Shown: positions 7,749-63,532 of the stretch, piece after piece
Position numbering within the stretch: the stretch's first letter is position 1
Layout: each line of letters starts with the position of its first letter
NCBI RefSeq assembly: GCF_035084215.1
Contig: NW_027139401.1
Coordinates: 62,001 to 126,000, forward strand
Direction of reading: 5' to 3'
Origin: Heptranchias perlo
Taxonomy: Eukaryota
Length of the DNA: 64,000 nucleotides
The notes under the pieces: generated by a model
What the model was told of the DNA's origin: nothing
Seen by the model: the letters and a program-made list of their open reading frames with translations, nothing else
Database searches by the model: none
Program-made: the position numbers and the translations under genes

Positions 7749-10700
7749 ATGTGGCAGTTGTGTGCGGGACGGGTCTGGAGCCTTGTCTGTGTGTTCCTGT
7801 TTGCCATCTGTGTGGGTAAGAGATATTTTTTTAATCGATTGTGTGTGAAGAGCAGCGAGAAGTGTGAGAACATCCTAAACGTTTCCAGTGTGTGCGAAGG
7901 CCATTCGGCCCATTGTAGTCGGTCCCTGGGTCTCTACTAGGCCAAACATCGCAACAATTCCGTATCTCTCTCTCTCCCTCGCTGTCTCAGCCTCTCTATC
8001 TTCTATTTGTCTGTCTCTCTCTGTCGTTCTTTCTCTATGTGTGTCTGTGTCTTTCTGTCTCCCTCTCCCTCGCTCAGTGTCACTGTCGTGTCTGTATCTC
8101 TCCCTTCCTCTCTCTGTCTCTCGCTCTCTCTGTCTGTCTCTCTCACTCTCTCCCACCCTCTCTCGCACCCTCCAACTCTCTCCCTCCCTCTCCCTCTGTC
8201 TCACTCTCTCCCTCCCTCTCTCTCGCTCTCTTTTTCCCTCCCTCTCTCTCATNNNNNNNNNNNNNNNNNNNNNNNNNNNNNNNNNNNNNNNNNNNNNNNN
8301 NNNNNNNNNNNNNNNNNNNNNNNNNNNNNNNNNNNNNNNNNNNNNNNNNNNNNNNNNNNNNNNNNNNNNNNNNNNNNNNNNCTATCGAACTCCCTCTTTA
8401 CCCGTAGCCCTGCACCATTCTCTGATTAAAATATTTTTCGATTTGCCCTTTACAATAAACAACCTTCTCTTCCTGAACCATTTCCTGCCAGCACTCGCTG
8501 TATCTCACAATCTGTGAACTGCATCAGCAAATATCTCCCATTACAGAGAGAGCTCCTCACACCCTGGCTGAACATTTCCAATCTCTCACTGCACCTCGTG
8601 CGGTTTCATTTGTTCCAAAATCTTTTTCAGTTCTTTGTTTCTACAAATGTGTGAGGGCAAAGGAGAGACAAGTGTCCACCAGATAAAAACATACACTGTA
8701 TCTAAACTGTGCTGTACCTGCCCTGGGAGTGTTTGACGGGACAGTGTAGAGGGAGCTTTACTCTGTATCTAACCCTGTACCTGCCCTGGGAGTGTTTGAC
8801 GGGACAGTGTAGAGGGAGCTTTACTCTGTATCGAACCCTGTACCTGCCCTGGGAGTGTTTGACGGGACAGTGTAGAGGGAGCTTTACTCTGTATCTAACC
8901 CTGTACCTGCCCTGGGAGTGTTTGATGGGACAGTGTAGAGGGAGCTTTACTCTGTATCTAACCCTGTACCTGCCCTGGGAGTGTTTGACGGGACAGTGTA
9001 GAGGGAGCTTTACTCTGTATCTAACCCTGTACCTGACCCTGGGAGTGTTTGATGGGACAGTGTAGAGGGAGCTTTACTCTGTATCTAACCCTGACCCTGC
9101 CCTGGGAGTGTTTGACAGGACAGTGTAGAGGGAGCTTTACTCTGTATCTAACCCTGTACCTGCCCTGGGAGTGTTTGATGGGACAGTGTAGAGGGAGCTT
9201 TACTCTGTATCTAACCCTGTACCTGCCCTGGGAGTGTTTGATGGGACAGTGTAGAGGGAGCTTCACTCTGTATCTAACCCTGTACCTGCCCTGGGAGTGT
9301 TTGATGAGACAGTGTGGAGGGAGCTTTACTCTCACTCCTCAACAAATTATCTGCCCCATTTCCCTGTGTCCCAACGCTTCAAAAGTATTTATTGCCTTTC
9401 AGTCACTTTGAGACCCTGCGGAGATGTGGCACTGGGTTATCTATCTCTCCAATTCGTTCCTCAATCACTGAGCTTGTCCTGTTCCACAAACACTCACTGT
9501 CTCCTCCTGTTAACTCAGGTGAAATTCAGACTCTCCGTCCCCCTGTGAATGGAACCCTGGGTCAGTCGATTGTCTTACCTGTTGGGATCCCACCCACACC
9601 GGAGGATGTTGAGGTTGTTTGGAAACGCAAAGAACCCGACGCCAGAATAGCGAGATACATGAACGGGAATGTGAAAACGTTCGGCACTGAGGAGTACACA
9701 CGACGGATAAAGTTTCATCCAGAGAATTACAGTCTGCAAATCAGTGGCTTACAGAGAGAGGACAGTGGTGTGTATGAGGTGATTGTAACAGGAGAGTTAG
9801 GACGTGAAACTTCGGAGCTGGTTCGACTGGACGTGTACGGTGAGTGAGATTGTATCTGCTGATTCTGGGCTTCACCCATTACTGAAAGACCTTAATTAAT
9901 GGGTTGGGACAGATATTGTACATTACCAAGTTTATTGAATCGCTCCTGATTGTCGGTGCCCATACTGGGGTCACTGATCTCAGGGGTGTGGGAGTGAGGC
10001 AGCCTGAGTCTGGGGGTACACGCAGTACATTGCTGGATTTACTCAATCCCAGTGTAAACCCTGTTCCCATCGGAGGGATGGAGAGGGGAGATGAAACAGG
10101 TTCCCCACAATCTCAGACTCACTGTGAAATACCTCACTCAATCCCAGTGTGAACCCTGTTCCCATCGGAGGGATGGAGAGGGGAGATGAAACAGGTTCCC
10201 CACAATCTCAGACTCACTGTGAAATACCAGAATACAGTTCTGTGCCTTTCACCATCTTGTCCTGTTTGCTGTTCATTCACCTGCCTCGTGGAAATAAATC
10301 AGTTGTCGGTCTAAATCCCGAGTCTCCAGACATTCGGAGAATCTGGGAATCTTTTAACGAGAAGGATTGACAGGACAGCCCACAAAACGTTCCAGTAACC
10401 AGGGTACAGAGTCATTATTCCCGATCATAATCCCAGGGTCTCCCTCTTATTTAACGCGATCTAGGCCAGAACGAGAGGGCGCACTCCAGATCTTAAGGGA
10501 CACAGGCTCAGCTTACAGGAGTGAGTGATGACACGGAACCAGTGAGAATTCCCGGGATACAAACCCAAAAACGGTGAATTTGAGCGAAGGAGTGTGCGAT
10601 GCATGTGTGTGACTCTCCTCCATTTTGATCCGCGTGAAACCAGCGGGGCAGCGACACAGTTAAAATGGCGGATGGAAGACTGAGACGGGATCTGCTTGAA

Positions 10701-13700
10701 GTTGACTCGGGAGCATCGTAGACGACACGGGTGGAGGGGAGGGGATAGTTGGGTATTGAGCTGTCACACAAGGGCCTCCAATACTTTCTCACATGTCTGC
10801 CTGTGTTTTTCTTTCGATCCTAATGTCAGAGCGTGTGTCAGGAACGAACATCACGGCTACTGTCACCCAGGGGATCTGTAACATCACCCTGACCTGCTCA
10901 GTGACCTCAGGCGATCGCACCAGCTTCCGATGGTGGAGGGGACGAGAGGAGTTGGGGAATGACAGCAACCATTATCTCTCTGGACACGGAGAGGAACTCC
11001 GGATCTATTACACATCGGATGTCAAGGAGAGTGTGTACAGGTGTGAAGCCTGGAACCCAGTCAGGAAGGACATTGCACAGGTCGAGCTGAGTGGTGTCTG
11101 TAATATAACCGTATCTGGTAAGTGTCACAGTGAGAGAAACAAACAACTGCATTCAGGTATCAGACAGTCTCGTGTTGTACCTGCCCTGGGAGTGTTTGAT
11201 GGGACAGTGTAGAGGGAGCTTTACTCTGTATCTAACCCTGTACCTGCCCTGGGAGTGTTTGATGGGACAGCGTAGAGGGAGCTTTACTCTGTATCTAACC
11301 CTGTACCTGCCCTGGGAGTGTTCGAGGGGACAGTGTAGAGGGAGCTTTACTCTGTATCTAACCCTGTACCTGCCCTGGGAGTGTTTGACGGGACAGTGTA
11401 GAGGGAGCTTTACTCTGTATCTAACCCTGTACCTGCCCTGGGAGTGTTTGACGGGACAGTGTCGAGGGAGCTTTACCCTGTATCTAACCCTGTACCTGCC
11501 CTGGGAGTGTTTGATGGGACAGTGTCGAGGGAGCATTACTCTGTATCTAACCCTGTACCTGCCCTGGGAGTGTTCGAGGGGACAGTGTAGAGGGAGCTTT
11601 ACTCTGTATCTAACCCTGTACCTGACCCTGGGAGTGTTTGACGGGACAGTGTCGAGGGAGCTTTACTCTGTATCTAACCCTGTACCTGCCCTGGGATTGT
11701 TTGATCCTTGACCTCGCACGGAGCTCGACCTGATTTGGCCCACGGATTGCTCGGTGAGTTGCCTCCGTGATGGTGAAGATCATCCTGTAAAATTGTCCTA
11801 AATTGTCTCTGTCCTTTTCACATCTTCCAGGCGTATCTGTTACGAATTCATCTGACAGCAACTACATTGCCTTCCTCCTTGTTTTTTTAATTCCATGTGT
11901 CGCCTTCTCCATTTATAAATGCCGTCGACATTCCTCCCGTTCAGAAGGTAAGAGATCATCTTCATCTCAATCAATGGGTGTGTCAGACTGCTGACCTTTC
12001 ACCCTCTGGGGTGGGGAGCTTTTTGCGGGGGTGTCAAATCGAGCTGGTTTTATCCCGGGCCCTCAGTGTCTCTTGAACTCTCTCATCGTAGGCTTGGCAA
12101 ATGCTGCAGATGGTCGAAGCTTCGAACGTGCCTCGGTTCCCAACAATTACGTGAGTATTGATGTACCTCGACACGCACACACACACGGAGATCCCACAGC
12201 TTCCCTCACCACCTGTGTGCCCTCCGTAGCCATCAGCTCATCCAAACTCTCGGCTGCCCCCCCTCTCCGTATCCGCACTCGTCCCGTTCGCCCATCACCC
12301 CTCCCCCACATGCTGTCTGAACCCTCCGTTGGCGGCCCATGGTTATCCAAGCCTCTCCGGGGCTTAGAACGGTGCGAGCCCCCTTTTGGCCAAAACGCTT
12401 TGGACCTCTTATCGTTAGTACTGACGGTGAGGGCTGGTTTTGTTATCGTGAATCGGACAATGATGGCAATCAGAGCTTAACTCCATGGGCATTAAACAAC
12501 ACAGGAGCAGGAGGAGGCCATTCGGCCCCTCTAGCCCGTTCCGCCATTCATTGAGATCAGGGCTGATCTGTGACCTCTGCCCCATATCCCTTAATACCCT
12601 TCGGTTAACAAAAACTGAACAATCTGAGATTTAAAATGAACAACTGAGCTGGCATCGACTGCCGTTTGCGGGAGAGAGTTCCAAACTTCTCCCACCCTTT
12701 GCCTGTCGAAGTGTTTCCAAACCTCACCCCTGAAAGTCCTGCCTCGAATTTTTAGACGGTGTCCCCCAGTCCCAACATAAGAGCATAATACCGTAAGAGA
12801 TAGGAGCAGGAGTAGGCCATTCGGCCCCTCGAGCCTGCTCCGCCATTCAATGAGATCATGGCTGATCTGATTTTTACCACAACTCCACTTTCCCGCCCTT
12901 TCCCCATATCCTTTGACTCCCTCGCTGATCAGAAATGTGTCCAACTCGGCCTTGAATGTACTCAGTGACTCGGCCTCCACAGCTTTTTGGGGCAAAGAAT
13001 TCCAAAGATTCACGACCCCCTGGGAGAAGAAATTCCTCCTCATTTCCGTCTTACTCTGGGACTATGCCCCCTCGTTTTAGATTCCCCCATGAGGGATAAC
13101 ATCCTCTCAGCATCTACCCTGTCGAGTCCCCAACCAGCAGGAATAGTTTCTCTCTATCTCCCCTATCAGTTCCCCTTAATAGCTTAAAAACTTCGATCAA
13201 ATCACCCCTTAATCTTCTAAATTCCAGGGAATACAACCCTAGTTTGTGTGTTCTCTCCTCGGAATTTAACTCTTGGAGTCCAGGTATCGTTCTGGTGAAC
13301 CTACGCTGCACTCCCTCCAAGGCCACTATCTCCTTCCCAAGGTGCGGTGCCCAGAACTGAATCCAGTACTCCAGGTGTGGTCTAACCAGGGCTCTGTATC
13401 GCTGTACAATAACTTCTACCCCCCCCCACCACCTTGTATTCCAGTCCTCCGTATATAGAGTCCAGCAACAATAATCTGCATTTATCCAGTGCCTTTCAAC
13501 GTAGTGAAACGTCACAAGGTGCTTCCCAGGAGCGTAAATCAGGCAAAATGAGACCCCGAGCCACATATTAGGAGATATCAGGACAGGTGACCAAAAGCTT
13601 GGGTCAAAGAGGGAGTTTTAAGGAGAGTCTTAAAGGAGGAGAGAGAGGGGTGGAGAGGTTTAGGGAGGGAATTCCAGAGCACAGAGGCCCCAGGCAGCTG

Positions 13701-15817
13701 AAGGCACGGCCGCCAATGGTGGAGCGATGGGAATCGGGGGGATGGGCAAGAGGCCAGAATTGGAGAAGCGCAGAGATCCGGGGGGGGGGGTTGGGGGGCT
13801 GGTTGGAGAGGCTGGAGGAGGTTACAGAGATCTGGGAGGATTGGAGGGGCTGGTGGGGGTTGCAGAGATCTGGGAGGATTGGAGGGGCTGGAGGAGGTTA
13901 CAGAGATCTGGGAGGGTCGGAGGGGCTGGAGGAGGTTGCAGAGATCTGGGAGGATTGGAGGGGCTGGAGGATGTTACAAAGATCTGCGAGGGTTGGAGGG
14001 GCTGGAGGAGGTTACAAAGATCTGGGAGGGTCGGAGGGGCTGGAGGAGGTTACAGAGATCTGGGAGGGTTGGAGGGGCTGGAGGAGGTTAGAGATCTGGG
14101 AGGATTGGAGGGGCTGGAGGAGGTTAGAGATCTGGGAGGATTGGAGGGGCTGGAGGGGGTTGCAGAGATCTGGGAGGATTGGAGGGGCTGGAGGAGGTTA
14201 CAGAGATCTGGGAGGGTCGGAGGGGCTGGAGGAGGGTTACAGAGATCTGGGAGGGTCGGAGGGGCTGGAGGAGGGTTACAGAGATCTGGGAGGGTCGGAG
14301 GGGCTGGAGGAGGGTTACAGAGATCTGGGAGGGTCGGTGGGGCTGGAGGAGGTTAGAGATCTGGGAGGATTGGAGGGGCTGGAGGGGGTTACAGAGATCT
14401 AGGAGGATTGGAGGGGCTGGAGGAGGTTACAGAGATCTGGGAGGGTCGGAGGGGCTGGAGGAGGGTTACAGAGATCTGGGAGGGTCGGAGGGGCTGGAGG
14501 AGGGTTACAGAGATCTGGGAGGGTCGGAGGGGCTGGAGGAGGGTTACAGAGATCTGGGAGGGTCGGAGGGGCTGGAGGAGGTTACAGAGATCTGGGAGGG
14601 TCGGAGGGGCTGGAGGAGGTTACAGAGATCTAGGAGGGTTGGAGGGGCTGGAGGAGGTTACAGAGATCTGGGAGGGTCGGTGGGGCTGGAGGAGGTTAGA
14701 GATCTGGGAGGATTGGAGGGGCTGGAGGGGGTTGCAGAGATCTGGGAGCATTGGAGGGGCTGGAGGAGGTTACAGAGATCTGGGAGGGTCGGAGGGGCTG
14801 GAGGAGGGTTACAGAGATCTGGGAGGGTCGGAGGGGCTGGAGGAGGGTTACAGAGATCTGGGAGGGTCGGAGGGGCTGGAGGAGGGTTACAGAGATCTGG
14901 GAGGGTCGGAGGGGCTGGAGGAGGTTACAGAGATCTGGGAGGGTCGGAGGGGCTGGAGGAGGTTACAGAGATCTAGGAGGGTTGGAGGGGCTGGAGGAGG
15001 TTACAGGGATCTGGGAGGGTTGGAGGGGCTGGAGGAGGTTACAAAGATCTGCGAGGGTTGGAGGGGCTGGAGGAGGTTACAGGGATCTGAGAGGGTTGGA
15101 GGGGCTGGAGGAGGTTACAGGGATCTGGGAGGGTTGGAGGGGCTGGAGGGGGTTGCAGAGATCTGGGAGGATTGGAGGGGCTGGAGGAGGTTACAGAGAT
15201 CTGGGAGGGTCGGAGGGGCTGGAGGAGGTTACAGAGATCTGGGAGGGTCGGAGGGGCTGGAGGAGGTTACAGAGATCTGGGAGGGTTGGGGGGACTGGAG
15301 GAGGTTTCAGAGATCTGGGAGGGGTTGGGGGCGAGGGCCATGGAGGGGATTTGAACACGAGGATGGGATCATTTTAAAATCGAGGCATTGCTGGACCGGT
15401 TACCAATGTAGGTCCAGCGAGCACCGGGGGGGGTGACAGGTGAACGGGACCTAGGATGCGGGGGGCAGCAGAGTTTGGGACGAGTGGATGGTTACGGAGC
15501 GTGCAGAGGTGAGAAAGCATTGGGGAATACTCGAGTGTGGGGGTGACAAAGGGCACGGATGAGGATTTCAGCAACAGATGAGCTGAGGCGGGAAGTGGAG
15601 GGGGGGGGGCCGGAGACGGGCGATGTTACAGGAGGTGGAAGCAGGCAGTCTTGGTGATGGAGCAGAAATGTGGCCGCAATCGGACGCAAAGTTGAGAACA
15701 TTCCTGAGTGTGTCATTTTTTTTCCCTTCCCGTCCCGAGGCATCGCAGGTTAACAGCGAGAACCCGGAAAGCCCGCCCCCCGTCTCCGCAGAGGTACAAC
15801 GCTCGAGCGGAACGTGA
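7749..15817 (+). CDS. CD2/SLAM-family IgSF receptor, gene 1 (about 306 aa). Exons: 7749-7815 leader, 9519-9839 IgV, 10830-11117 IgC2, 11831-11947 TM, 12092-12150 cytoplasmic, 15749-15817 cytoplasmic plus stop (last exon least certain)
   Basis: Canonical GT-AG junctions with matching phases (1,1,1,1,0) give an open frame. Leader MWQLCAGRVWSLVCVFLFAICV. IgV has the C-strand Trp and LQISGLQREDSGVYEV but no B/F cysteines. IgC2 has CNITLTC...YRCEAWNPV...C (four Cys). TM YIAFLLVFLIPCVAFSIY then KCRR. Cys-less V plus two-disulfide C2 is the established CD2/SLAM architecture. Confidence 0.88.
7962..8381. repeat. CT-rich low-complexity tract followed by a 129-N run in intron 1 (paralogs 22352-22934, 42203-42785, 57715-58297)
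   Basis: Imperfect (CT)n tract, with N at 8253-8381, 22806-22934, 42657-42785 and 58169-58297. Confidence 0.9.
8695..9333 (-). repeat. 63-bp minisatellite array in intron 1 of gene 1 (about 10 units)
   Basis: Reverse complement of the upstream unit: gggagtgtttgatgggacagtgtagagggagctttactctgtatctaaccctgtacctgccct. Confidence 0.95.
10041..10228. repeat. 95-bp tandem repeat in intron 2: 2 copies in gene 1, 4 in gene 2 (29460-29836), 4 in gene 3 (44927-45303), 2 in gene 4 (60439-60626)
   Basis: Unit actcaatcccagtgtaaaccctgttcccatcggagggatggagaggggagatgaaacaggttccccacaatctcagactcactgtgaaatacctc. Confidence 0.9.
11176..11705 (-). repeat. 63-bp minisatellite array in intron 3 between the C2 and TM exons (paralogs 30785-31503, 46252-46970, 61574-62252)
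   Basis: Same unit and orientation as the intron 1 arrays. Confidence 0.95.
12495..13420 (-). mobile_element. Cluster of CR1 LINE 3' fragments in intron 5 (paralogs 32294-33219, 47761-48686)
   Basis: RRNFFSQGVVNLWNSLPQKAVEA and LVRPHLEY...LYSLEFRRLRGDLIEVFK ORF2 C-terminal motifs, and two ggccattcggcccct CR1 3'-end motifs. Confidence 0.85.
13464..15680 (-). mobile_element. L2-type LINE 3' fragment with an internal minisatellite expansion (paralogs about 33263-35293 and 48730-50803)
   Basis: Minus-strand SITKTACFHL / NIARLRP / LSSSVAEILIRA remnants, and an L2-like 3' end (tgcatttat..agtgcctt..aacgtagt on the + strand). Confidence 0.75.
13795..15320. repeat. 36-39-bp G-rich minisatellite inside the L2 (paralogs 33595-34935, 49065-50445)
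   Basis: Unit gagatctgggagggtcggaggggctggaggaggttaca. Confidence 0.92.
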
Positions 15818-17488: not shown

Positions 17489-17494
17489 AATAAA
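17489..17494 (+). terminator. Candidate polyadenylation signal of gene 1 (paralogs 37038-37043 and 52514-52519)
   Basis: AATAAA about 45 nt downstream of a good acceptor (tcttcatttcag, 17442), in non-repeat sequence after the last coding exon. Confidence 0.35.
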
Positions 17495-17512
17495 ACTGTC
17501 TGAAAGGCTTTC

Positions 17513-17882
17513 AGAGAATCGTAGAGTGGTTCCAACATAGAAGGAGGCCATTTGGCCCATCGAGCACCGTGCCAGCTCCACACAACTGGTCCCACTCCCC
17601 CCCGACTCCCGCCCTTTCCCCGTAGCTCTGCCAATTTTTTCCCTTCAGGTATTTATCCAACTCCCTTTCGAAAGCCACGATTGAATCTGCCTCCACCTCC
17701 CTTTCAGGCAACGTATTCCAGATCCTAACCACTCGCTGCGTAAAAAAGATTTTCCCCTGTCGCCTTTGGTTCTTTTGCCAGTCCCCTTAACTCTGCGTCC
17801 TCTGCTTCCCGACCCTTCCGCCAATGGGAACACTTTCTCATTGTTTGCTTTATCCAAAGCCATCATGATTTTGGACACTTCT
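17513..17882 (-). mobile_element. CR1 LINE 3' end fragment (paralogs 37062-37431, 52538-52907)
   Basis: VRIWNTLPEREVEADSIVAFERELDKYL plus the ggccatttggccc tail motif. Confidence 0.8.
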
Positions 17883-17892
17883 GTCCTGAAAT

Positions 17893-19371: not shown

Positions 19372-19372
19372 G

Positions 19373-34100: not shown

Positions 34101-35432
34101 GGAGGGGCTGGAGGAGGGTTACAGAGATCTGGGAGGGTCGGAGGGGCTGGAGGAGGTTACAGAGATCTGGGAGGGTCGGAGGGGCTGGAGGAGGTTACAG
34201 AGATCTAGGAGGGTTGGAGGGGCTGGAGGAGGTTACAGAGATCTGGGAGGGTCGGTGGGGCTGGAGGAGGTTAGAGATCTGGGAGGATTGGAGGGGCTGG
34301 AGGGGGTTGCAGAGATCTGGGAGCATTGGAGGGGCTGGAGGAGGTTACAGAGATCTGGGAGGGTCGGAGGGGCTGGAGGAGGGTTACAGAGATCTGGGAG
34401 GGTCGGAGGGGCTGGAGGAGGGTTACAGAGATCTGGGAGGGTCGGAGGGGCTGGAGGAGGGTTACAGAGATCTGGGTGGGTCGGAGGGGCTGGAGGAGGT
34501 TACAGAGATCTGGGAGGGTCGGAGGGGCTGGAGGAGGTTACAGAGATCTAGGAGGGTTGGAGGGGCTGGAGGAGGTTACAGGGATCTGGGAGGGTTGGAG
34601 GGGCTGGAGGAGGTTACAAAGATCTGCGAGGGTTGGAGGGGCTGGAGGAGGTTACAGGGATCTGAGAGGGTTGGAGGGGCTGGAGGAGGTTACAGGGATC
34701 TGGGAGGGTTGGAGGGGCTGGAGGGGGTTGCAGAGATCTGGGAGGATTGGAGGGGCTGGAGGAGGTTACAGAGATCTGGGAGGGTCGGAGGGGCTGGAGG
34801 AGGTTACAGAGATCTGGGAGGGTCGGAGGGGCTGGAGGAGGTTACAGAGATCTGGGAGGGTCGGAGGGGCTGGAGGAGGTTACAGAGATCTGGGAGGGTC
34901 GGAGGGGCTGGAGGAGGTTACAGAGATCTGGGAGGGGTTGGGGGCGAGGGCCATGGAGGGGATTTGAACACGAGGATGGGATCATTTTAAAATCGAGGCA
35001 TTGCTGGACCGGTTACCAATGTAGGTCCAGCGAGCACCGGGGGGGGTGACAGGTGAACGGGACCTAGGATGCGGGGGGCAGCAGAGTTTGGGACGAGTGG
35101 ATGGTTACGGAGCGTGCAGAGGTGAGAAAGCATTGGGGAATACTCGAGTGTGGGGGTGACAAAGGGCACGGATGAGGATTTCAGCAACAGATGAGCTGAG
35201 GCGGGAAGTGGAGGTGGGGGGGGCCGGAGACGGGCGATGTTACAGGAGGTGGAAGCAGGCAGTCTTGGTGATGGAGCAGAAATGTGGCCGCAATCGGACG
35301 CCAAAGTTGAGAACATTCCTGAGTGTGTCATTTTTTTTCCCTTCCCGTCCCGAGGCATCGCAGGTTAACAGCGAGAACCCGGAAAGCCCGCCCCCCGTCT
35401 CCGCAGAGGTACAACGCTCGAGCGGAACGTGA
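22140..35432 (+). CDS. CD2/SLAM-family IgSF receptor, gene 2 (hybrid copy). Exons: 22140-22206, 28937-29257, 30439-30726, 31630-31746, 31891-31949, 35364-35432
   Basis: Same exon lengths (67, 321, 288, 117, 59, 69 nt), splice sites and open frame as gene 1. Intron 1 is enlarged by a roughly 5.5-kb minisatellite array. Confidence 0.86.
23215..28745 (-). repeat. Expanded 63/64-bp minisatellite array (about 5.5 kb) in intron 1 of gene 2, with internal block duplications
   Basis: Unit as in other introns. Variant patterns recur at offsets of 1528 and 1718 bp. Confidence 0.95.
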
Positions 35433-47900: not shown

Positions 47901-50900
47901 AATGAACAACTGAGCTGGCATCGACTGCCGTTTGCGGGAGAGAGTTCCAAACTTCTCCCACCCTTTGCCTGTCGAAGTGTTTCCAAACCTCACCCCTGAA
48001 AGTCCTGCCTCAAATTTTTAGACGGTGTCCCCCAGTCCCACCATAAGAGCATAAGACCGTAAGAGATAGGAGCAGGAGTAGGCCATTCGGCCCCTCGAGC
48101 CTGCTCCGCCATTCAATGAGATCATGGCTGATCTGATTTTTACCACAACTCCACTTTCCCGCCCTTTCCCCATATCCTTTGACTCCCTCGCTGATCAGAA
48201 ATGTGTCTAACTCGGCCTTGAATGTACTCAGTGACTCGGCCTCCACAGCTTTTTGGGGTAAAGAATTCCAAAGATTCACGACCCCCTGGGAGAAGAAATT
48301 CCTCCTCATTTCCGTCTTACTCTGGGACTATGCCCCCTCGTTTTAGATTCCCCCATGAGGGATAACATCCTCTCAGCATCTACCCTGTCGAGTCCCCAAC
48401 CAGCAGGAATAGTTTCTCTCTATCTCCCCTATCAGTTCCCCTTAATAGCTTAAAAACTTCGATCAAATCACCCCTTAATCTTCTAAATTCCAGGGAATAC
48501 AACCCGAGTTTGTGTGTTCTCTCCTCGGAATTTAACTCTTGGAGTCCAGGTATCGTTCTGGTGAACCAACGCTGCACTCCCTCCAAGGCCACTATCTCCT
48601 TCCCAAGGTGCGGTGCCCAGAACTGAACCCAGTACTCCAGGTGTTGTCTAACCAGGGCTCTGTATCGCTGTACAATAACTTCTACCCCCCCCCACCACCT
48701 TGTATTCCAGTCCTCCGTATATAGAGTCCAGCAACAATAATCTGCATTTATCCAGTGCCTTTTAACGTAGTGAAACGTCACAAGGTGCTTCCCAGGAGCG
48801 TAAATCAGGCAAAATGAGACCCCGAGCCACATATTAGGAGATATCAGGACAGGTGACCAAAAGCTTGGGTCAAAGAGGGAGTTTTAAGGAGAGTCTTAAA
48901 GGAGGAGAGAGAGGGGTGGAGAGGTTTAGGGAGGGAATTCCAGAGCACAGAGGCCCCAGGCAGCTGAAGGCACGGCTGCCAATGGTGGAGCGATGGGAAT
49001 CGGGGGGATGGGCAAGAGGCCAGAATTGGAGAAGCGCAGAGATCCGGGGGGGGGGGGGTTGGGGGGCTGGTTGGAGGGGCTGGAGGAGGTTACAGAGATC
49101 TGGGAGGATTGGAGGGGCTGGTGGGGGTTGCAGAGATCTGGGAGGATTGGAGGGGCTGGAGGAGGTTACAGAGATCTGGGAGGGTCGGAGGGGCTGGAGG
49201 AGGTTGCAGAGATCTGGGAGGATTGGAGGGGCTGGAGGAGGTTACAAAGATCTGCGAGGGTTGGAGGGGCTGGAGGAGGTTACAAAGATCTGGGAGGGTC
49301 GGAGGGGCTGGAGGAGGTTACAGAGATCTGGGAGGGTAGGAGGGGCTGGAGGAGGTTACAGAGATCTGGGAGGGTCGGAGGGGCTGGAGGAGGGTTACAG
49401 AGATCTGGGAGGGTCGGAGGGGCTGGAGGAGGGTTACAGAGATCTGGGAGGATTGGAGGGGCTGGAGGAGGTTACAGAGATCTGGGAGGGTCGGAGGGGC
49501 TGGAGGAGGGTTACAGAGATCTGGGAGGGTCGGAGGGGCTGGAGGAGGGTTACAGAGATCTGGGAGGGTCGGAGGGGCTGGAGGAGGGTTACAGAGATCT
49601 GGGAGGGTCGGAGGGGCTGGAGGAGGTTACAGAGATCTGGGAGGGTCGGAGGGGCTGGAGGAGGTTACAGAGATCTAGGAGGGTTGGAGGGGCTGGAGGA
49701 GGTTACAGAGATCTGGGAGGGTCGGTGGGGCTGGAGGAGGTTAGAGATCTGGGAGGATTGGAGGGGCTGGAGGGGGTTGCAGAGATCTGGGAGCATTGGA
49801 GGGGCTGGAGGAGGTTACAGAGATCTGGGAGGGTCGGAGGGGCTGGAGGAGGGTTACAGAGATCTGGGAGGGTCGGAGGGGCTGGAGGAGGGTTACAGAG
49901 ATCTGGGAGGGTCGGAGGGGCTGGAGGAGGGTTACAGAGATCTGGGAGGGTCGGAGGGGCTGGAGGAGGTTACAGAGATCTGGGAGGGTCGAAGGGGCTG
50001 GAGGAGGTTACAGAGATCTAGGAGGGTTGGAGGGGCTGGAGGAGGTTACAGGGATTTGGGAGGGTTGGAGGGGCTGGAGGAGGTTACAAAGATCTGCGAG
50101 GGTTGGAGGGGCTGGAGGAGGTTACAGGGATCTGAGAGGGTTGGAGGGGCTGGAGGAGGTTACAGGGATCTGGGAGGGTTGGAGGGGCTGGAGGGGGTTG
50201 CAGAGATCTGGGAGGATTGGAGGGGCTGGAGGAGGTTACAGAGATCTGGGAGGGTCGGAGGGGCTGGAGGAGGGTTACAGAGATCTGGGAGGGTCGGAGG
50301 GGCTGGAGGAGGTTACAGAGATCTGGGAGGGTCGGAGGGGCTGGAGGAGGTTACAGAGATCTGGGAGGGTCGGAGGGGCTGGAGGAGGTTACAGAGATCT
50401 GGGAGGGTCGGAGGGGCTGGAGGAGGTTACAGAGATCTGGGAGGGGTTGGGGGCGAGGGCCATGGAGGGGATTTGAACACGAGGATGGGATCATTTTAAA
50501 ATCGAGGCATTGCTGGACCGGTTACCAATGTAGGTCCAGCGAGCACCGGGGGGGGTGACAGGTGAACGGGACCTAGGATGCGGGGGGCAGCAGAGTTTGG
50601 GACGAGTGGATGGTTACGGAGCGTGCAGAGGTGAGAAAGCATTGGGGAATACTCGAGTGTGGGGGTGACAAAGGGCACGGATGAGGATTTCAGCAACAGA
50701 TGAGCTGAGGCGGGAAGTGGAGGGGGGGGGGGCCGGAGACGGGCGATGTTACAGGAGGTGGAAGCAGGCAGTCTTGGTGATGGAGCAGAAATGTGGCCGC
50801 AATCGGACGCCAAAGTTGAGAACATTCCTGAGTGTGTCATTTTTTTTCCCTTCCCGTCCTGAGGCATCGCAGGTTAACAGCGAGAACCCGGAAAGCCCGC

Positions 50901-50941
50901 CCCCCGTCTCCGCAGAGGTACAACGCTCGAGCGGAACGTGA
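41991..50941 (+). CDS. CD2/SLAM-family IgSF receptor, gene 3 (hybrid copy). Exons: 41991-42057, 44404-44724, 45906-46193, 47097-47213, 47358-47416, 50873-50941
   Basis: Same exon lengths and intact splice sites and frame as genes 1-2. The C2 F-strand reads VHTCEAWN instead of VYRCEAWN. Confidence 0.86.
43068..44210 (-). repeat. 63/64-bp minisatellite array in intron 1 of gene 3
   Basis: About 18 units. Confidence 0.95.
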
Positions 50942-57502: not shown

Positions 57503-60500
57503 ATGTGGCAGTTGTGTGCGGGACGGGTCTGGAGCCTTGTCTGTGTGTTCCTGTTTGCCATCTGCGTGGGTAAGAGATATTCTTTTCATCAATTGTGTGT
57601 GAAGAGCAGCGAGAAGTGTGAGAACATCCTTAACGTTTCCAGTGTGTGCGAAGGCCATTCGGCCCATCGTGGTTGGTCCCTGGGTCTCTACTAGGCCAAA
57701 CATCGCAACAATTCCGTCGCTCTCTCTCGCTGTCTCTGCCGCTCTATTTTCTTTTTGTCTGTCTCTCTCTCTGTCTTTCTTTCTCTCTGTCTTTCTTCAC
57801 TCTGTCTGTGTCTTTCTGTCATCATCTCCCTCTCTCTGTTTCTCTCTCTCTTTCCCACCCTGTCTGTCTCGTTCCCTCACTGTCTCTCTCTCACTGTATC
57901 ACTGTCTCTCCCACCCTCTCTCTCACCATCCGTCTCCCTCATTCCCTCTCCCTATTTCACTCTCGCCCTCCCTCTCTCTCACCCTCCCTCTGTCTCACTC
58001 TCTCTGTCTCTCTATCCCTCTCCCTCTCTCTATGTCACTCTCTTTCTGTCTCCCTCTCCCTCTTTCTCACTCTCCCTCTGTCTCATTCCCTCTCCCTCTC
58101 TCTGCATCCCTCTCTCCCCCTCTCTCTCTTTCTCTCTCCCTCTGTCTCATTCTCTCCCTCTCTCTCTCNNNNNNNNNNNNNNNNNNNNNNNNNNNNNNNN
58201 NNNNNNNNNNNNNNNNNNNNNNNNNNNNNNNNNNNNNNNNNNNNNNNNNNNNNNNNNNNNNNNNNNNNNNNNNNNNNNNNNNNNNNNNNNNNNNNNNCCT
58301 CTTTACCCGTAGACGTGCACCATTCTCTCCTTAAAATAATTCTCACTTTGCCGTTTACAATAAACCATTTCCTGCCAGCACTCGCTGTATCTTGCAGTCT
58401 GTGAACTGCATCAGCAAATATCTCCCATTACAGAGAGAGCTCCTCACACCCTGGCTGAACATTTCCGATTTCTCACTGCACCTCGTGCGGTTTCATTTGT
58501 TCAAAAATCTTTTACAGTTCTTTGTTTCTACAAATGTGTGAGGGCAAAGGAGAGACAAGTGTCCACCAGATAAAAACATACCCTGTATCTAAACCGTGCT
58601 GTACCTGCCCTGGGAGTGTTTGATGGGTCAGTGCAGAGGGAGCTTTACTCTGTATCTAACCCTGTACCTGACCCTGGGAGTGTTTGATGGGACAGTGTAG
58701 AGGGAGCTTTACTCTGTATCTAACCCTGTACCTGCCCTGGGAGTGTTTGATGGGACAGTGCAGAGGGAGCTTTACTCTGTATCTAACCCTGTACCTGACC
58801 CTGGGAGTGTTTGATGGGACAGTGTAGAGGGAGCTTTACTCTGTATCTAACCCTGTACCTGCCCTGGGAGTGTTTGATGGGACAGTGTAGAGGGAGCTTT
58901 ACTCTGTATCTAACTCTGTACCTGCCCTGGGAGTGTTTGATGGGACAGTGTCGAGGGAGCTTTACTCTGTATCTAAGCCTGTACCTGGCCCTGGGAGTGT
59001 TTGATGGGACAGTGTAGAGGGAGCTTTACTCTGTATCTAACACTGTACCTGACCCTGGGAGTGTTTGATGGGACAGTGTAGAGGGAGCTTTACTCTGCAT
59101 CTAAGCCTGTACCTGGCCCTGGGAGTGTTTGATGGGACAGTGTAGAGGGAGCTTTACTCTGTATCTAACACTGTACCTGACCCTGGGAGTGTTTGATGGG
59201 ACAGTGTAGAGGGAGCTTTACTCTGTATCTAAGCCTGTACCTGGCCCTGGGAGTGTTTGATGGGACAGTGTAGAGGGAGCTTTACTCTGTATCTAACCCT
59301 GTACCTGCCCTGGGAGTGTTTGATGGGACAGTGTAGAGGGAGCTTTACTCTGTATCTAACCCTGTACCTGCCCTGGGAGTGTTTGACGGGACAGTGTGGA
59401 GGGAGCTTTACTCTGTATCTAACCCTGTACCTGCCCTGGGAGTGTTTGATGGGACAGTGTAGAGGGAGCTTTACTCTGTATCTAACCCTGTACCTGCCCT
59501 GGGAGTGTTTGATGTGACAGTGTAGAGGGAGCTTTACTCTGTATCTAAGCCTGTACCTGCCCTGGGAGTGTTTGATGGGACAGTGTAGAGTGAGCTTTGC
59601 TCTGTATCTAATCCTGTACCTGCCCTGGGAGTGTTTGATGGGACAGTGTAGAGGGAGCTTTACTCTGTATCTAACCCTGTCCCTGCCCTGGGAGTGTTTG
59701 ATGGGACAGTGTCGAGGGTTCTTGACTCGAACTCCTCCACAAATTATCTGCCCCATTTCCCTACGTTCCAACACTTCAAAAGTATTTATTGCCTTTCAGT
59801 CACTTAAAGACCCTGTGGAGATGTGGCACTGGGTTATATATCTCTCCAACTCGTTCCTCAATCACTGAGCTTGTCCTGTTCCACAAACACTCACTGTCTC
59901 CTCCTGTTAACTCAGGTGAAATTCAGACTCTCCGTCCCCCTGTGAATGGAACCCTGGGTCAGTCGATTGTCTTACCTGTTGGGATCCCACCCACACCGGA
60001 GGATGTTGAGGTTGTTTGGAAACGCAAAGAACCCGACGCCAGAATAGCGAGATACATGAACAAGAATGTTGAAACGTTCGGCACTGAGGAGTACACGGGA
60101 CGGATAAAGTTTCATCCAGAGAATTACAGTCTGCAAATCAGTGACTTACAGAGAGAGGACAGTGGTGTGTATGAGGTGATTGTAACAGGAGCGTTAGGAC
60201 GTGAAACTTCGGAGCTGGTTCGACTGGACGTGTACGGTGAGTGAGATTGTATCTGCTGATTCTGGGCTTCACCCATTACTGAAAGACCCCAAATTAATGG
60301 GTTGGGACAGATATTGTACATTACAAAGTTTATTGAATCGCTCCTGATTGTCAGTGCCCATACTGGGGTCACTGATCTCAGGGGTGTCGGGGTGAGGCAG
60401 CCTGAGTCTGGGGGTACACGCAGTACATTGCTGGATTTACTCAATCCCAGTGTAAACCCTGTTTCCATTGGAGGGATGGAGAGGGGAGATGAAACAGGTT

Positions 60501-63500
60501 CCCCACAATCTCAGACTCACTGTGAAATACCTCACTCAATCCCAGTGTAAACCCTGTTCCCATCGGAGGGATGGAGAGGGGAGATGAAACAGGTTCCCCA
60601 CAATCTCAGACTCACTGTGAAATACCAGAATACAGTTCTGTGCCTTTCACCATCTTGTCCTGTTTGCTGTTCATTCACCTGCCTCGTGGAAATAAATCAG
60701 TTGTCGGTCTAAATCCTGAGTCTCCAGACATTCGGAGAATCTGGGAATCTTTTAACGAGAAGGATTGATAGGACAGCCCACAAAACATTCCAGTAACCAG
60801 GGTACAGAGTTATGATTCCCTATCACAAGCCAAGGGTCTCCCTCTTGTTTAACGCGATCTAGGCCAGAACGAGAGGGCGCACTCCAGATCTTAAGGGACA
60901 CAGGTTCAGCTTACAGGAGTGAGTAACAACACTGAACCAGAGAGAACTCCCGGGATACAAACCCAAAAACGGTGAATTTGAGCGAAGGAGTGTGTGATGC
61001 ATGTGTGTGATTCTCCTCCATTTTGATCCACGTGAAACCAGCGGGGGAGCGAGACAGTTAAAATGGCGGATGGAGGACTGAGACGGGATCTGCTTAAAGT
61101 TGACTCGGGAGCATCGTAGACGACACGGGTGGCGGGGAGGGGATAGTTGGGTATTGAGCTGTCACACAAGGGCCTCCATTACTTTCTCACATGTCTGCCT
61201 GTGTTTTTCTTTCGATCCTAATGTCAGAGCGTGTGTCAGGAACGAACATCACGGCTACTGTCACCCAGGGGATCTGTAACATCACCCTGACCTGCTCAGT
61301 GACCTCAGGCAATCTCACCAGCTTCCGATGGTGGAGGGGACGAGAGGAGTTGGGGAATGACAGCAACCATTATCTCTCTGGACACGGAGAGGAACTCCGG
61401 ATCTATTACACATCGGATGTCAAGGAGAGTGTGTACAGGTGTGAAGCCTGGAACCCAGTCAGTAACGACACCGCACAGATCAAGCTGAGTGATGTCTGTA
61501 ATATAACCGTATCTGGTAAGTGTCACAGTGAGAGAAGCAAACAACTGCTTTCAGGTATCAGACAGTCTCGTGTTGTACCTGCCCTGGGAGTGTTTGATGG
61601 GACAGTGTAGAGGGAGCTTTACTCTGTATCCAACCCTGTACCTGCCCTGGGAGTGTTTGATGGGACAGTGTAGATGGAGCTTTACTCTGTATCTAACCCT
61701 GTACCTGACCCTGGGAGTGTTTGATGGGACAGTGTAGAGGGAGCTTTACTCTGTATCTAACCCTGTACCGACCCTGGGAGTGTTTGATGGGACAGTGTAG
61801 AGGGAGCTTTACTCTGTATCTAACCCTGTACCAGCCCTGGGAGTGTTTGATGGGACAGTGTAGAGGGAGCTTTATTCTGTATCTAACCCTGCACCAGCCC
61901 TGGGAGAGTTCGAGGGGACAGTGTAGAGGGAGCTTTACTCTGTATCTAATCCTGTACCTGCCTTGGGAGTGTTTGACGGTAGAATGTAGAGGGAGCTTTA
62001 CTCTGTATCTAACCCTGTACCTGCCCTGGGAGTGTTTGAGGGGACAGTGTAGAGGGAGCTTTACTCTGTATCTAACCCTGTACCTGCCTTGGGAGTGTTT
62101 GACGGTAGAATGTCGAGGGAGCTTTACTCTGTATCTAACCCTGTACCTGCCCTGGGAGTGTTTGATGGGACAGTGTTGAGGGAGCTTTACTCTGTATCTA
62201 ACCCTGAACCTGCCCCTGGGAGTTTTTGATAGGACAATGTAGAGGGAGCTTTAAATTGGGAGGGGTCGGGATTGGAGGGGAGGGGAATTTGGAGGGGAAG
62301 GGAATCGGAGGGGAGGGGATTGGAGGGCAGGGGAATTAGAGTGGAAGGAAATTGGATGGTAGGGGATTGGATGGTAGGGGATTGGAGGGGAGGGAATTGG
62401 AGGGGAGGGAATTGGAGGGGAGGGGATTGGAAGGGAAGGGAATTGGGGGGGAAGGGAATTGGGGGGGAAGGGAATTGGGGGGGTGGAGGGGATTGGGGGG
62501 AGGGGATTGGGGGGGGAGGGGAGGGGATTGGAGAGGAGGTGAATTGGACGGCAGGGGATTGGAGGGGAGGGGATTGTAGGAGAGGGGATTGGAGGGGAAG
62601 GGATTGGAGGGGAAGGGAATTGGAGGGGAAGGGAATTGGAGGGGAAGGGAATTGGAGGGGAAGGGAATTGGAGGGGAGGGGATTGGAGGGGGGGGAATTG
62701 GAGGGGGGAATTGGAGAGGACGAGAATTGAAGGGGAGGGGATTGGAGGGGAGGGGATTGGAGGGGAGGGAATTGAAGAGGAGGGGAATTGGAGGGGAGTG
62801 GATTGGAGGAGAGTGAATTGGAGGCGAGGGGAATTGGAGGCGAGGGGAAGTGGAGGCGAGGGGAAGTGGAGGCGAGGGGAAGTGGAGGCGAGGGGAATTG
62901 GAGGCGAGGGGAAGTGGAGGCGAGGGGAATTGGAGGCGAGGGGAATTGGAGGCGAGGGGAATTGGAGGGCAGGGGATTGGAGGGGAGGGAATTGGAGGCG
63001 AGGGGAATTGGAGGCGAGGGGAATTGGAGGCGAGGGGAATTGGAGGCGAGGGGAATTGGAGGCGAGGGGAATTGGAGGCGAGAGGAATTGGAGGCGAGGG
63101 GAATTGGAGGCGAGGGGAATTGGAGGGCAGGGGATTGGAGGGCAGGGGATTGGAGGGCAGGGGATTGGAGGGCAGGGGTTTGGAGGGGAGGGAATTGGAG
63201 GGGAGGGGATTGGAGGGGAGGGGATTGGAGTGGAGGGAATTGGAGGGGAGAGGATTGGAGGGGAGGGGATTGGAGGGGAGGGGATTGGAGGGGAGGGGAT
63301 TGGAGTGGAGGGAATTGGAGGGGAGGGGATTGGAGGGGAGGGGATTGGAGGGGAGGGGATTGGAGGTGGAGAACGTGTTGCTGTGCCCATGAAGATTGGA
63401 TGGAGTAATATCTGTGAGAATGTTTCTCCTCCCCAGGGACACAGTCATCTACTGCCACAGTGGTTATAGTGCTGATGCTCGTCATTCTATTGGCCGGTCT

Positions 63501-63532
63501 ATTATTCATTCTCTACAAGAATAAAGAAACAA
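57503..63532 (+). CDS. CD2/SLAM-family IgSF receptor, gene 4, 3'-incomplete in window. Exons: 57503-57569, 59916-60236, 61228-61515, and a distinct TM exon 63437-63532
   Basis: Leader, V and C2 exons are paralogous to genes 1-3. The next exon has acceptor tttctcctccccag and donor gtaagt, is 96 nt, phase 1-1, and encodes GTQSSTATVVIVLMLVILLAGLLFILYKNKET. Cytoplasmic exons lie beyond the window. Confidence 0.85.
58580..59722 (-). repeat. 63/64-bp minisatellite array in intron 1 of gene 4
   Basis: About 18 units, nearly identical to the gene 3 array. Confidence 0.95.
62255..63365. repeat. 15-16-bp purine-rich tandem repeat in intron 3 of gene 4
   Basis: Units ggaggggaggggatt, ggaggggaagggaatt and ggaggcgaggggaatt. 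Confidence 0.92.

What the first reader, a model, noticed from the sequence alone, without database searches (positions are those of the whole stretch)
7749..63532. Tandem CD2/SLAM-like receptor cluster: one near-identical V+C2 ectodomain attached to two unrelated membrane/signalling modules
Seen: four spliced genes with identical leader peptides and V/C2 domains that differ at only a handful of residues. Genes 1-3 use the TM exon GVSVTNSSD..IA.LLVFLIPCVAFSIYKCRRHSSRSE. Gene 4 uses an unrelated exon, GTQSSTATVVIVLMLVILLAGLLFILYKNKET (63437-63532). Established: a Cys-less IgV plus four-Cys IgC2 defines the CD2/SLAM family, and shared ectodomains with different tails typify paired immune receptors. 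Inference: this is a recently expanded, modular paired-receptor-like system in a cartilaginous fish, with homogenised ligand-binding exons and distinct outputs. Neither TM carries the charged residue typical of adaptor-coupled activating receptors.
Basis: partly seen in the sequence, partly recalled or inferred. Interest (0 to 1): 0.8.

Follow-up and report, generated by a model that had tools for sequence, protein, structure and literature searches.

The report
Shark SLAM receptor genes swapping tails
Four neighbouring immune-receptor genes of a sevengill shark share almost the same outer part, but one keeps the family's usual signalling tail while three carry a borrowed tail whose signalling motif is destroyed; this is an ordinary, already predicted kind of gene cluster with a neat modular twist.

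Summary
The window carries four tandem units, each with a leader, a Cys-less IgV exon and a four-Cys IgC2 exon. All splice sites are AG/GT and all Ig-exon junctions are phase 1. Units 1-3 continue into one TM exon (TM-A); unit 4 continues into an unrelated one (TM-B, 63437-63532).

The four N runs lie in intron 1 and touch no coding frame.

The genes are already RefSeq predictions for Heptranchias perlo and match the window exons at 100%. Gene 4 is 'CD48 antigen-like', gene 3 is 'SLAM family member 5-like', and genes 1 and 2 are merged as 'Ly-9-like'.

CD2/SLAM membership is supported by profile and fold searches. SLAMF6, CD48, CD2 and CD58 rank first; CEACAM is close by sequence.

New here:
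- Gene 4's tail, which lies beyond the window, has two ITSMs and is the conserved elasmobranch tail.
- The TM-A tail is 87% identical to the tail of a neighbouring SLAM gene with a different ectodomain. In genes 1-3 its ITSM (TIYAEV) reads PVSAEV.
- A third tail with a conserved Arg/Lys in the TM exists in a paralogue outside the window.

'Homogenised exons' is not supported. Whole units are alike, and the differences are mostly nonsynonymous and patchwork.

No transcript evidence was obtained for the C2-to-TM-B joint. The scan had noted related SLAM genes elsewhere in this genome.

The parts
7749..7815 (+). Gene 1 leader exon (MWQLCAGRVWSLVCVFLFAICV, phase 1 donor)
   Evidence: matches RefSeq P0171/P0003
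8253..8381 (.). N run in intron 1 of gene 1. Equivalent runs lie at 22806-22934, 42657-42785 and 58169-58297 in intron 1 of genes 2-4. None touches coding sequence.
9519..9839 (+). Gene 1 IgV exon, no Cys
   Evidence: 100% to P0171 residues 23-129
10830..11117 (+). Gene 1 IgC2 exon, four Cys, four N-glycosylation sequons
11831..11947 (+). Gene 1 TM-A exon
12092..12150 (+). Gene 1 cytoplasmic exon GLANAADGRSFERASVPNNY (phase 1 in, phase 0 out)
15740..15817 (+). Gene 1 last exon (ASQ)VNSENPESPPPVSAEVQRSSGT plus stop, with an alternative acceptor at 15749. The former ITSM place reads PVSAEV.
22140..22206 (+). Gene 2 leader exon with its own ATG
28937..29257 (+). Gene 2 IgV exon
30439..30726 (+). 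Gene 2 IgC2 exon (two sequons)
31630..31746 (+). Gene 2 TM-A exon
31891..31949 (+). Gene 2 cytoplasmic exon
35355..35432 (+). Gene 2 last exon (alternative acceptor at 35364)
41991..42057 (+). Gene 3 leader exon
44404..44724 (+). Gene 3 IgV exon
   Evidence: 100% to P0170
45906..46193 (+). Gene 3 IgC2 exon
   Evidence: 100% to P0170
47097..47213 (+). Gene 3 TM-A exon
47358..47416 (+). Gene 3 cytoplasmic exon
50864..50941 (+). Gene 3 last exon (alternative acceptor at 50873 gives RefSeq isoform X2)
57503..57569 (+). Gene 4 leader exon
59916..60236 (+). Gene 4 IgV exon
   Evidence: 100% to P0153. The V>C2 joint 60235>61227 is seen in RNA contigs of 3 of 4 runs, although the long contigs of X1 and X2 that span it carry letters of paralogues.
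61228..61515 (+). Gene 4 IgC2 exon (six sequons)
   Evidence: 100% to P0153
61574..63373 (.). 63-bp satellite (61574-62253) followed by a 15-bp G-rich repeat (62254-63373) in gene 4's C2-TM intron. Similarity to units 1-3 ends at this satellite.
63437..63532 (+). Gene 4 TM-B exon. The ITSM-bearing exons lie beyond the window's end.
   Evidence: 100% to P0153 residues 226-257. No read depth here in 4 of 4 runs.

Best explanation
This is part of a tandem array of CD2/SLAM-family receptor genes of the sharpnose sevengill shark. The array was built by very recent unequal crossing-over and patchy gene conversion.

Each unit offers the same cassette: leader, Cys-less IgV and four-Cys IgC2 exons, all in phase 1. 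The cassette is joined to different membrane and tail modules.

Gene 4 is the canonical member. Its TM-B exon leads to a tail, encoded beyond the window, with two ITSMs (TVYAEV, TVYDTI). That tail type is conserved across sharks and rays. By analogy with other SLAM receptors it should recruit SAP-type SH2 adaptors or phosphatases (inferred).

Genes 1-3 are chimeras. They carry the same ectodomain on the TM and tail module of a neighbouring SLAM gene whose ectodomain is only distantly related. In that module the single ITSM has been destroyed (TIYAEV has become PVSAEV). They should therefore see the same ligand, probably family members themselves, without giving the ITSM signal. That would make them ligand-only or damping partners, like CD48 or SLAMF8/9 (inferred).

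The ectodomains are not held uniform. They differ mainly by amino-acid-changing sites and by N-glycosylation sequons, many of them shared in patches with other paralogues.

Shown: anatomy, family membership, tail homologies, loss of the motif, mosaic identity. Inferred: expression of each window gene, ligand, signalling outcome.
For: - Exon anatomy and phases.
- RefSeq models match the exons at 100%. P0153 is gene 4, P0170/P0169 are gene 3, and P0171/P0003 are genes 1+2.
- Family: Pfam V-set 2.5e-10 and 5e-12, Receptor_2B4 21.5 bits against a cut-off of 21. A profile of 22 elasmobranch proteins hits SLAMF6 at 1.8e-18 over both domains. Foldseek's top 7 are NTB-A, CD48, CD2 and CD58. V has 0 Cys and C2 has 4 Cys in 4 of 4 genes.
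- Tail B: homologous to the tails of many ray and shark SLAM-like proteins; two ITSMs in P0153 and P0186.
- Tail A: 87% identical to the tail of P0140. The whole proteins are 49% identical, mostly because of the tail. An ITSM is present at the aligned place in P0140, Chiloscyllium P0143 and Mobula P0045 and absent from genes 1-3. The last exon is identical in the 3 units (S6).
- Mosaic: units 3 and 4 are 100-99.9% identical from upstream through the V region but only 95.1% around C2. Units 2 and 3 are 99.6% identical there.
- Diversification: 24 of 28 variable bases are nonsynonymous. C2 sequons number 4, 2, 2 and 6.
Against: - No transcript was tied to any window gene. In the 4 coded runs (one sample) the TM-B exon has zero depth and no 61515>63437 joint. 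The long spliced V-C2 contigs of X1 and X2 carry letters of paralogues outside the window.
- TM-A usage and the tail exons of genes 1-3 rest on RefSeq predictions and intact splice sites only.
- The nonsynonymous excess is not significant. The binomial test gave p = 0.076 before I moved one site to the synonymous class. The ratio is about 1.9 (my arithmetic's counts), which also fits relaxed constraint.
- CEA and CEACAM1 score nearly as well as SLAMF6 by sequence profile: 2.7e-17 and 7e-17.
- RefSeq treats genes 1 and 2 as one four-Ig gene.
- Units that are 100% identical over kilobases, on an unplaced 240 kb contig that is half tandem repeat, could include assembly error.
Confidence: 0.7

Rival explanations
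1. Genes 1-3 are young, functionally decaying duplicates (nascent pseudogenes). The lost ITSM and the amino-acid changes would then reflect relaxed constraint and not a new role.
For: The ratio of nonsynonymous to synonymous change is about 1.9 and not significantly above 1. Four consecutive codons are changed at the ITSM. No read evidence exists for these genes (one search covered gene 4 only).
Against: All open frames, all AG/GT sites and all phases are intact in 3 of 3 copies. The tail exons are identical or nearly so among the three copies: 0 of 78 and 0-3 of 176 bases differ. The PNNY motif of the tail is also kept in Chiloscyllium. RefSeq lists two isoforms that differ by a 9-nt acceptor shift. 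I take this to suggest transcript support, based on recalled Gnomon practice and not tested here.
Confidence: 0.15
2. Genes 1 and 2 are really one Ly-9-like gene with four Ig domains (V-C2-V-C2), as RefSeq models it. The array would then be a mixture of two-Ig and four-Ig genes.
For: RefSeq XP_067834900.1 and XP_067834901.1 join gene 1's C2 exon to gene 2's V exon. All exons are phase 1, so the joint keeps the frame. V-C2-V(-C2) proteins are predicted in rays (P0012, P0016).
Against: Gene 1 has its own intact TM-A, cytoplasmic and last exons. Gene 2 has its own ATG leader. Its upstream region differs from that of the stand-alone genes 3 and 4 at only 2 of 762 bases. The joint would skip 17.8 kb and five good exons. 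No reads were laid on it.
Confidence: 0.2
3. Part of the four-fold repetition is an assembly artefact: haplotypes or repeat copies wrongly laid in tandem in a satellite-rich unplaced contig.
For: Units 3 and 4 are 100% identical over 829 + 280 bases and differ at 1 of 708 bases in the V region. Half of the window is tandem repeat, 32056 of 64000 bases. The contig is only 240,190 bases.
Against: The units differ in structure. The intron-1 satellite is 5.5 kb in unit 2 against 1.1 kb in units 3 and 4. The 95-bp repeat has 4 copies in some units and 2 in others. Unit 4 has a different 3' end. The units also differ at coding sites shared with other paralogues, which errors would not produce.
Confidence: 0.1

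Closest known systems
SLAMF6 (NTB-A) and SLAMF5 (CD84): classical ITSM-bearing SLAM receptors
   Same: Cys-less IgV plus four-Cys IgC2, one TM and a tail with two T-x-Y-x-x-V/I motifs (gene 4 through RefSeq P0153). Best profile hit and best fold hit.
   Different: About 28% identity to NTB-A, so no orthology to a particular mammalian member can be claimed. Ligand and SAP binding are untested. The gene sits in a very young tandem array.
ITSM-less members of the family: CD48 (GPI-anchored), SLAMF8 and SLAMF9 (short tails). Their properties are recalled, not tested here.
   Same: A family ectodomain without an ITSM output, as in genes 1-3. NCBI's automatic names for relatives here include 'CD48 antigen-like'.
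   Different: Genes 1-3 have a TM and a cytoplasmic part of about 57-60 residues (my count from the sequences). It derives from an ITSM tail whose Tyr is replaced. They are neither GPI-anchored nor anciently tail-less.
Expanded CD2/SLAM family of Xenopus (Guselnikov et al. 2011, Immunogenetics 63:679). I saw it only as a reference, plus one summarising passage in PMC4536121.
   Same: A lineage-specific expansion of the family with diversified signalling modules, including charged (NxxR) TMs.
   Different: A different lineage. Here the same near-identical ectodomain is found on three tail modules within one contig. The charged TM seen here (R/K near the outer end) was not compared with NxxR.
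Paired receptor families (KIR, LILR/PIR, SIRP, Ly49; recalled)
   Same: Near-identical ectodomains, different tails, tandem arrays, gene conversion, fast-evolving ectodomains.
   Different: No charged-TM activating member lies inside the window. The 'other' partner here is a motif-dead tail and not an adaptor-coupled one. The ITSM is a switch motif and not a plain ITIM.
CEACAM family
   Same: Cys-less N-terminal IgV and IgC2 domains with the NPVS motif. It is a close second by sequence.
   Different: C2 here has four Cys that align with SLAMF6's, including the last one. The fold ranking puts CEACAM1 at rank 15 and lower.

Membership tests
CD2/SLAM family | N-terminal IgV domain without the canonical intradomain disulfide | tested here: met
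   V-set 2.5e-10 and 5e-12; 0 Cys in the V exon in 4 of 4 genes
CD2/SLAM family | Membrane-proximal IgC2 domain with four Cys (two disulfides). That this defines the family is recalled. | tested here: met
   Cys at residues 146, 152, 201 and 220 in 4 of 4 genes. All four are invariant in 22 elasmobranch relatives. The final Cys aligns with SLAMF6's.
CD2/SLAM family | Closest sequence relatives among solved proteins are family members | tested here: met
   Profile search: SLAMF6 1.8e-18 first; CD48/CD2 chimera, CD2, CD48 and SLAMF5 between 3e-15 and 5e-13. CEA at 2.7e-17 and CEACAM1 at 7e-17 come second and third, so the margin is narrow. With the single V exon, SLAMF5 8e-6, CD48 5e-5, SLAMF6 8e-5 and CEACAM1 1e-4. 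The single C2 exon hits CEACAM1 and NCAM2 first.
CD2/SLAM family | Two-domain fold closest to CD2/CD48/CD58/SLAM ectodomains | tested here: met
   AlphaFold model of RefSeq P0153: mean pLDDT 70.5, and above 85 over most of the Ig domains. Foldseek ranks 1-7 are NTB-A, CD48, CD2 twice, NTB-A twice and CD58.
SLAM subfamily (ITSM receptors) | Cytoplasmic T-x-Y-x-x-V/I motifs | tested here: met
   Met for gene 4 only, and only through RefSeq P0153, whose tail lies beyond the window: TVYAEV at 274 and TVYDTI at 314. Not met for genes 1-3: 0 ITSMs in P0170, P0169 and P0171.
SLAM subfamily (ITSM receptors) | Binding of SAP/EAT-2 and homophilic or intrafamily ligand binding | not testable with these tools
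   Needs binding assays
Paired activating/inhibitory receptors | Near-identical ectodomains on different tails | tested here: met
Paired activating/inhibitory receptors | An activating partner with a charged TM residue and a short tail | tested here: not met
   Not met inside the window: TM-A and TM-B have no charged residue, and no TM-C-like exon is in the window. A candidate lies outside the window. P0001 is on the same contig, has an ectodomain 85% identical, and has R/K in the TM in 5 of 5 homologues.
CEACAM family (considered) | IgC2 domains with a single disulfide (recalled); best matches to CEACAMs | tested here: not met
   Four Cys in C2; CEACAM1 is at fold rank 15 or lower; second by sequence profile
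Ly-9 (SLAMF3) type, four Ig domains | One transcript encoding V-C2-V-C2 | not tested
   Only the RefSeq model joins gene 1 to gene 2.

The most novel reading that the evidence does not exclude
The satellite arrays that sit in nearly every intron and spacer of this cluster act as recombination substrates. These are the 63-bp unit, a third of the window and present in both orientations, and the 95-bp repeat in the V-C2 intron. They would shuffle a fast-diversifying, phase-1 V-C2 cassette among at least three tail modules: a double ITSM, an ITSM-dead tail and an Arg/Lys-TM tail. That would give an early-branching shark a three-way paired SLAM receptor system, with signalling, silent and adaptor-coupled arms. 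It would arise by a mechanism, satellite-guided exon shuffling, that has not been described for this family.
Probability: 0.25. Interest if true: 0.65.

Novelty: new member of a known kind. Interest (0 to 1): 0.4.

Why it matters
SLAM receptors tune lymphocyte and NK-cell responses.

Published context seen here:
- A figure legend reports slamf genes in the white-shark MHC (PMC10751288).
- A passage reports Slamf6 in nurse-shark Tfh-like cells (PMC10529500).

I found no paper on how the family is organised in sharks. Two full-text searches bear on this. Supplements were not opened.

This locus shows, at base resolution, how one ligand-binding cassette is re-used on a signalling tail and on a silenced tail within a few tens of kilobases. 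A charged-TM version lies nearby. If the genes are expressed, this is a simple natural system for two questions: how ITSM-less partners modulate SLAM signalling, and how paired receptor sets arise. It remains one more lineage-specific expansion of a known family, and the genes are already in RefSeq as predictions.

Tried and rejected
Table:
  - Genes 2 against 3, C2 region: 4 of 288 exon bases differ, 0 of 659 intron bases (Fisher p = 0.008).
  - Genes 3 against 4, V region: 1 of 321 exon, 0 of 387 intron.
  - Genes 1 against 2, C2: 11 of 288 exon, 14 of 659 intron.
  - Only the leader and V exons of the older unit 1 are better kept than their surroundings: 1 of 67 against 67 of 587, and 7 of 321 against 20 of 385.
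- A search of the window for a TM-C-like exon, for gene 4's ITSM exons and for the neighbour's ectodomain (tblastn). Among the first 40 output lines, all of them tail-C rows, there were only low-complexity chance matches. No line for the other three queries was in view.
- Transcript test of 61515>63437. There was no depth on 62229-63735 in 4 of 4 runs. I had set likeness to 97, which also shuts out the paralogue's 91% TM-B. The runs are contigs, from one sample.
- A phylogeny with human CD2, CD48, CD58 and SLAMF proteins was not made. Profile and fold ranking were used instead.
- Literature. 'SLAM + cartilaginous fish + ITSM' gave 0 papers. 'SLAM family + Xenopus + expansion + ITSM' gave 1 irrelevant paper. 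The first search gave only unrelated papers.
- My own spliced models were never joined or searched. Exons were searched one by one.
Full report
WHAT IS THERE

The window is 64 kb and half of it is tandem repeat: 32,056 bases, of which 20,880 belong to one 63-bp satellite. It holds four head-to-tail units of about 15-20 kb on the + strand.

Reading the borders directly, each unit has three shared exons:
- a leader exon with its own ATG;
- a 321-nt IgV exon;
- a 288-nt IgC2 exon.

All are flanked by AG and GT and all are in phase 1. Units 1-3 go on to a 117-nt TM exon (TM-A). Unit 4 goes on to a 96-nt TM exon (TM-B, 63437-63532), again in phase 1.

THE N RUNS

There are four N runs of 129 letters each. 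They lie at the same relative place in intron 1 of each unit. No frame runs through them. In units 2-4 the flanks on both sides keep the same offsets. I did not fill them or look them up.

HOW ALIKE THE GENES ARE

- The leader peptide is identical in 4 of 4 genes.
- V differs at 7 of 106 residues and C2 at 16 of 95.
- V has no Cys and C2 has four, in 4 of 4 genes.

WHOSE GENES THEY ARE

A search with the V exon alone against 1.8 billion representative proteins and two word-indexed searches led to RefSeq predictions for Heptranchias perlo. These match the window exons at 100%:
- XP_067834893.1 'CD48 antigen-like' (P0153, 327 aa) is gene 4, including TM-B.
- XP_067834894.1 and XP_067834895.1 'SLAM family member 5-like' (P0170, P0169) are gene 3.
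- XP_067834900.1 and XP_067834901.1 'Ly-9-like' (P0171, P0003) join gene 1's L-V-C2 to gene 2's V-C2-TM-A-tail.

The cluster is therefore already predicted in a public annotation. The names are automatic.

The models also revealed two small cytoplasmic exons behind TM-A, which I then located:
- GLANAADGRSFERASVPNNY at 12092-12150, 31891-31949 and 47358-47416.
- (ASQ)VNSENPESPPPVSAEVQRSSGT plus stop at 15740-15817, 35355-35432 and 50864-50941, with a second acceptor 9 nt further on.

FAMILY

- Exon by exon, Pfam gives V-set for V. Receptor_2B4 sits just over its cut-off, 21.5 against 21 bits, and C2 gives generic Ig models.
- Against solved structures the V exon finds SLAMF5, CD48 and SLAMF6, with CEACAM1 close behind. 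The C2 exon finds CEACAM1 and NCAM2 first.
- A profile of 22 full-length elasmobranch relatives (A1) puts SLAMF6 first, at 1.8e-18 over both domains. CEA and CEACAM1 follow, then CD48, CD2 and SLAMF5.
- An AlphaFold model of P0153 has high confidence over the two Ig domains. Its seven best Foldseek matches are NTB-A, CD48, CD2 and CD58.

With the Cys pattern and the ITSMs below, membership of the CD2/SLAM group is supported. The margin over CEACAM is narrow by sequence and clearer by fold and by the four-Cys C2.

THE TAILS

Tail B. Residues 258-327 of P0153 lie beyond the window and carry TVYAEV and TVYDTI. This TM-plus-tail is homologous to the tails of many SLAM-like predictions from catshark, sawfish, skates and stingrays. 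They share a PPEG(N/D) stretch between the two motifs. It is the family's conserved tail in elasmobranchs.

Tail A. This is not an unrelated invention. It is 87% identical to the tail of P0140 (XP_067834897.1), a SLAM-like gene on the same 240,190-base contig. P0140's V and C2 domains align only weakly with the window's; the whole proteins are 49% identical, the tail included. P0140 reads SPRTIYAEVQRS where genes 1-3 read SPPPVSAEVQRS. More distant tail-A relatives in Chiloscyllium (TVYAVV) and Mobula (TIYANV) also keep the motif. Genes 1-3 thus carry a borrowed tail whose only ITSM is gone. All three copies share this: 0 of 78 bases differ in that exon. One Tyr remains, in VPNNY, a motif also kept in Chiloscyllium. 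In the short isoform it reads YVNS, which fits the Grb2 SH2 preference as I recall it. This is a weak lead only.

Tail C. A third module is found in P0001 ('CD48 antigen-like', same contig, ectodomain 85% identical). It has an Arg or Lys near the outer end of the TM in 5 of 5 homologues. It is not in the window.

HOW THE ARRAY AROSE

With satellites masked, self-comparison shows a mosaic:
- Units 3 and 4 are identical from 660 nt upstream of the leader exon (41167/56679) through the V region: 0 of 762, 1 of 281 and 1 of 708 bases differ. They differ by 4.9% around C2.
- Units 2 and 3 differ there at only 4 of 947 bases.
- Unit 4's C2 region is nearest to unit 1's.
- Unit 1's upstream region and intron 1 differ by 11% from the others, yet its 3' half is 99% identical to units 2 and 3.

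The switches fall at tandem repeats. One is the 95-bp repeat of the V-C2 intron, with 2 copies in units 1 and 4 and 4 copies in units 2 and 3. The other is the 63-bp satellite after C2, where unit 4's similarity to the others ends. This fits repeated unequal crossing-over and conversion with breakpoints in the repeats (inference).

The exons are not specially homogenised. In the youngest pairs every difference is exonic and amino-acid-changing. The four differences between genes 2 and 3 in C2 are each shared with some other paralogue. That points to short conversion patches.

Overall, 24 of 28 variable bases are nonsynonymous. One search counted 25; one base of codon 81 is silent. The ratio is about 1.9 (my arithmetic's counts) and is not significant.

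N-glycosylation sequons in C2 number 4, 2, 2 and 6 in genes 1-4. In the model, 4 of the 7 variable V residues (70, 72, 75, 115) lie on the C', C'' strands and the FG loop. As I recall, this is the face used for ligand binding in this family.

TRANSCRIPTS

One sample with four coded runs holds the family. I laid the runs on 59900-63999 at 97% likeness.
- Spliced contigs show the V>C2 joint (60235>61227, GT..AG) in 3 of 4 runs. The runs are therefore RNA and this splice is real.
- The abundant X1 and X2 contigs carry letters that match the paralogue P0186 or a relative, not the window genes.
- The pieces with no differences are too short to tell gene 4 from paralogues.
- The TM-B exon has no depth and no joint in 4 of 4 runs.

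Contigs show presence, not absence. The joint rests on three things: the RefSeq model, the same architecture in paralogue P0186, and the conservation of tail B.

VERDICT

This is a real, recently expanded SLAM-family array, already predicted in RefSeq. Gene 4 is the canonical ITSM receptor. Genes 1-3 are same-ectodomain chimeras with an ITSM-dead tail taken from a neighbouring family member. A charged-TM version lies outside the window.

It is a new member of a known kind of system: lineage-specific CD2/SLAM expansion with diversified tails, as cited for Xenopus. I saw that Xenopus work only in a passage of PMC4536121 and in reference lists. The finding is of moderate interest.

My own spliced models were not joined or searched.

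Noticed in passing
window 3162-6739, 8692-9332, 11176-11705, 19386-21053, 23216-28739 and the equivalent places in units 3 and 4: One 63-bp satellite fills about a third of the window (20,880 bases). It lies in one orientation upstream of each gene and in the opposite orientation in intron 1 and in the C2-TM intron. Array length differs greatly between units: 5.5 kb in unit 2's intron 1 against 0.6-1.1 kb in the others.
   Followed up: partly
window 8253-8381, 22806-22934, 42657-42785, 58169-58297: The four N runs have the same length (129) and sit at the same relative place in each unit's intron 1: 829 nt after the start of the shared upstream block in units 2-4. This looks like a mask laid on a repeated element and not like true assembly gaps.
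   Followed up: no
window 17744-18391, 37293-37940, 52769-53416, also 341-1272 and 63655-63963: Open frames with reverse-transcriptase-like sequence of a LINE sit between the genes and are duplicated with the units. A related fragment lies at the window's start, so the array probably continues upstream. The 'LINE/RT' label is my reading of the translations, not a database hit.
   Followed up: no
window 62254-63373 and 13801-15328, 33599-34936, 49069-50453: G-rich minisatellites lie inside tail introns: a 15-bp GGAGGGGAGGGGATT array of about 72 copies only in gene 4's C2-TM intron, and a 38-bp array of 35-40 copies between the two cytoplasmic exons of genes 1-3.
   Followed up: no
outside the window (RefSeq P0001, P0042, P0038, P0163, P0164): A third SLAM tail type has a conserved Arg/Lys and a conserved His in the TM, in sharks and rays (5 of 5). 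In H. perlo it sits on an ectodomain 85% identical to the window's.
   Followed up: partly
runs X1 and X2 laid on window 59915-61454: The most abundant spliced V-C2 contigs in the only sample found belong to paralogues outside the window. X2's letters give S35, D80, V81, R84, L88, L89, K115, Q118 and Y182, all as in P0186.
   Followed up: yes
outside the window (RefSeq P0182, P0183): Two predicted isoforms of the neighbouring tail-A gene read through the donor after ...VPNNY into the intron for about 140 residues. The same open frame exists in the window behind genes 1-3, for example 11995-12477.
   Followed up: no
window 7586-8252 against 21977-22805: Gene 1's upstream region and first intron differ by 11% and 188 gap columns from those of genes 2-4, which are nearly identical to each other. 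The leader exon differs by one silent base. Gene 1 may be regulated differently.
   Followed up: no
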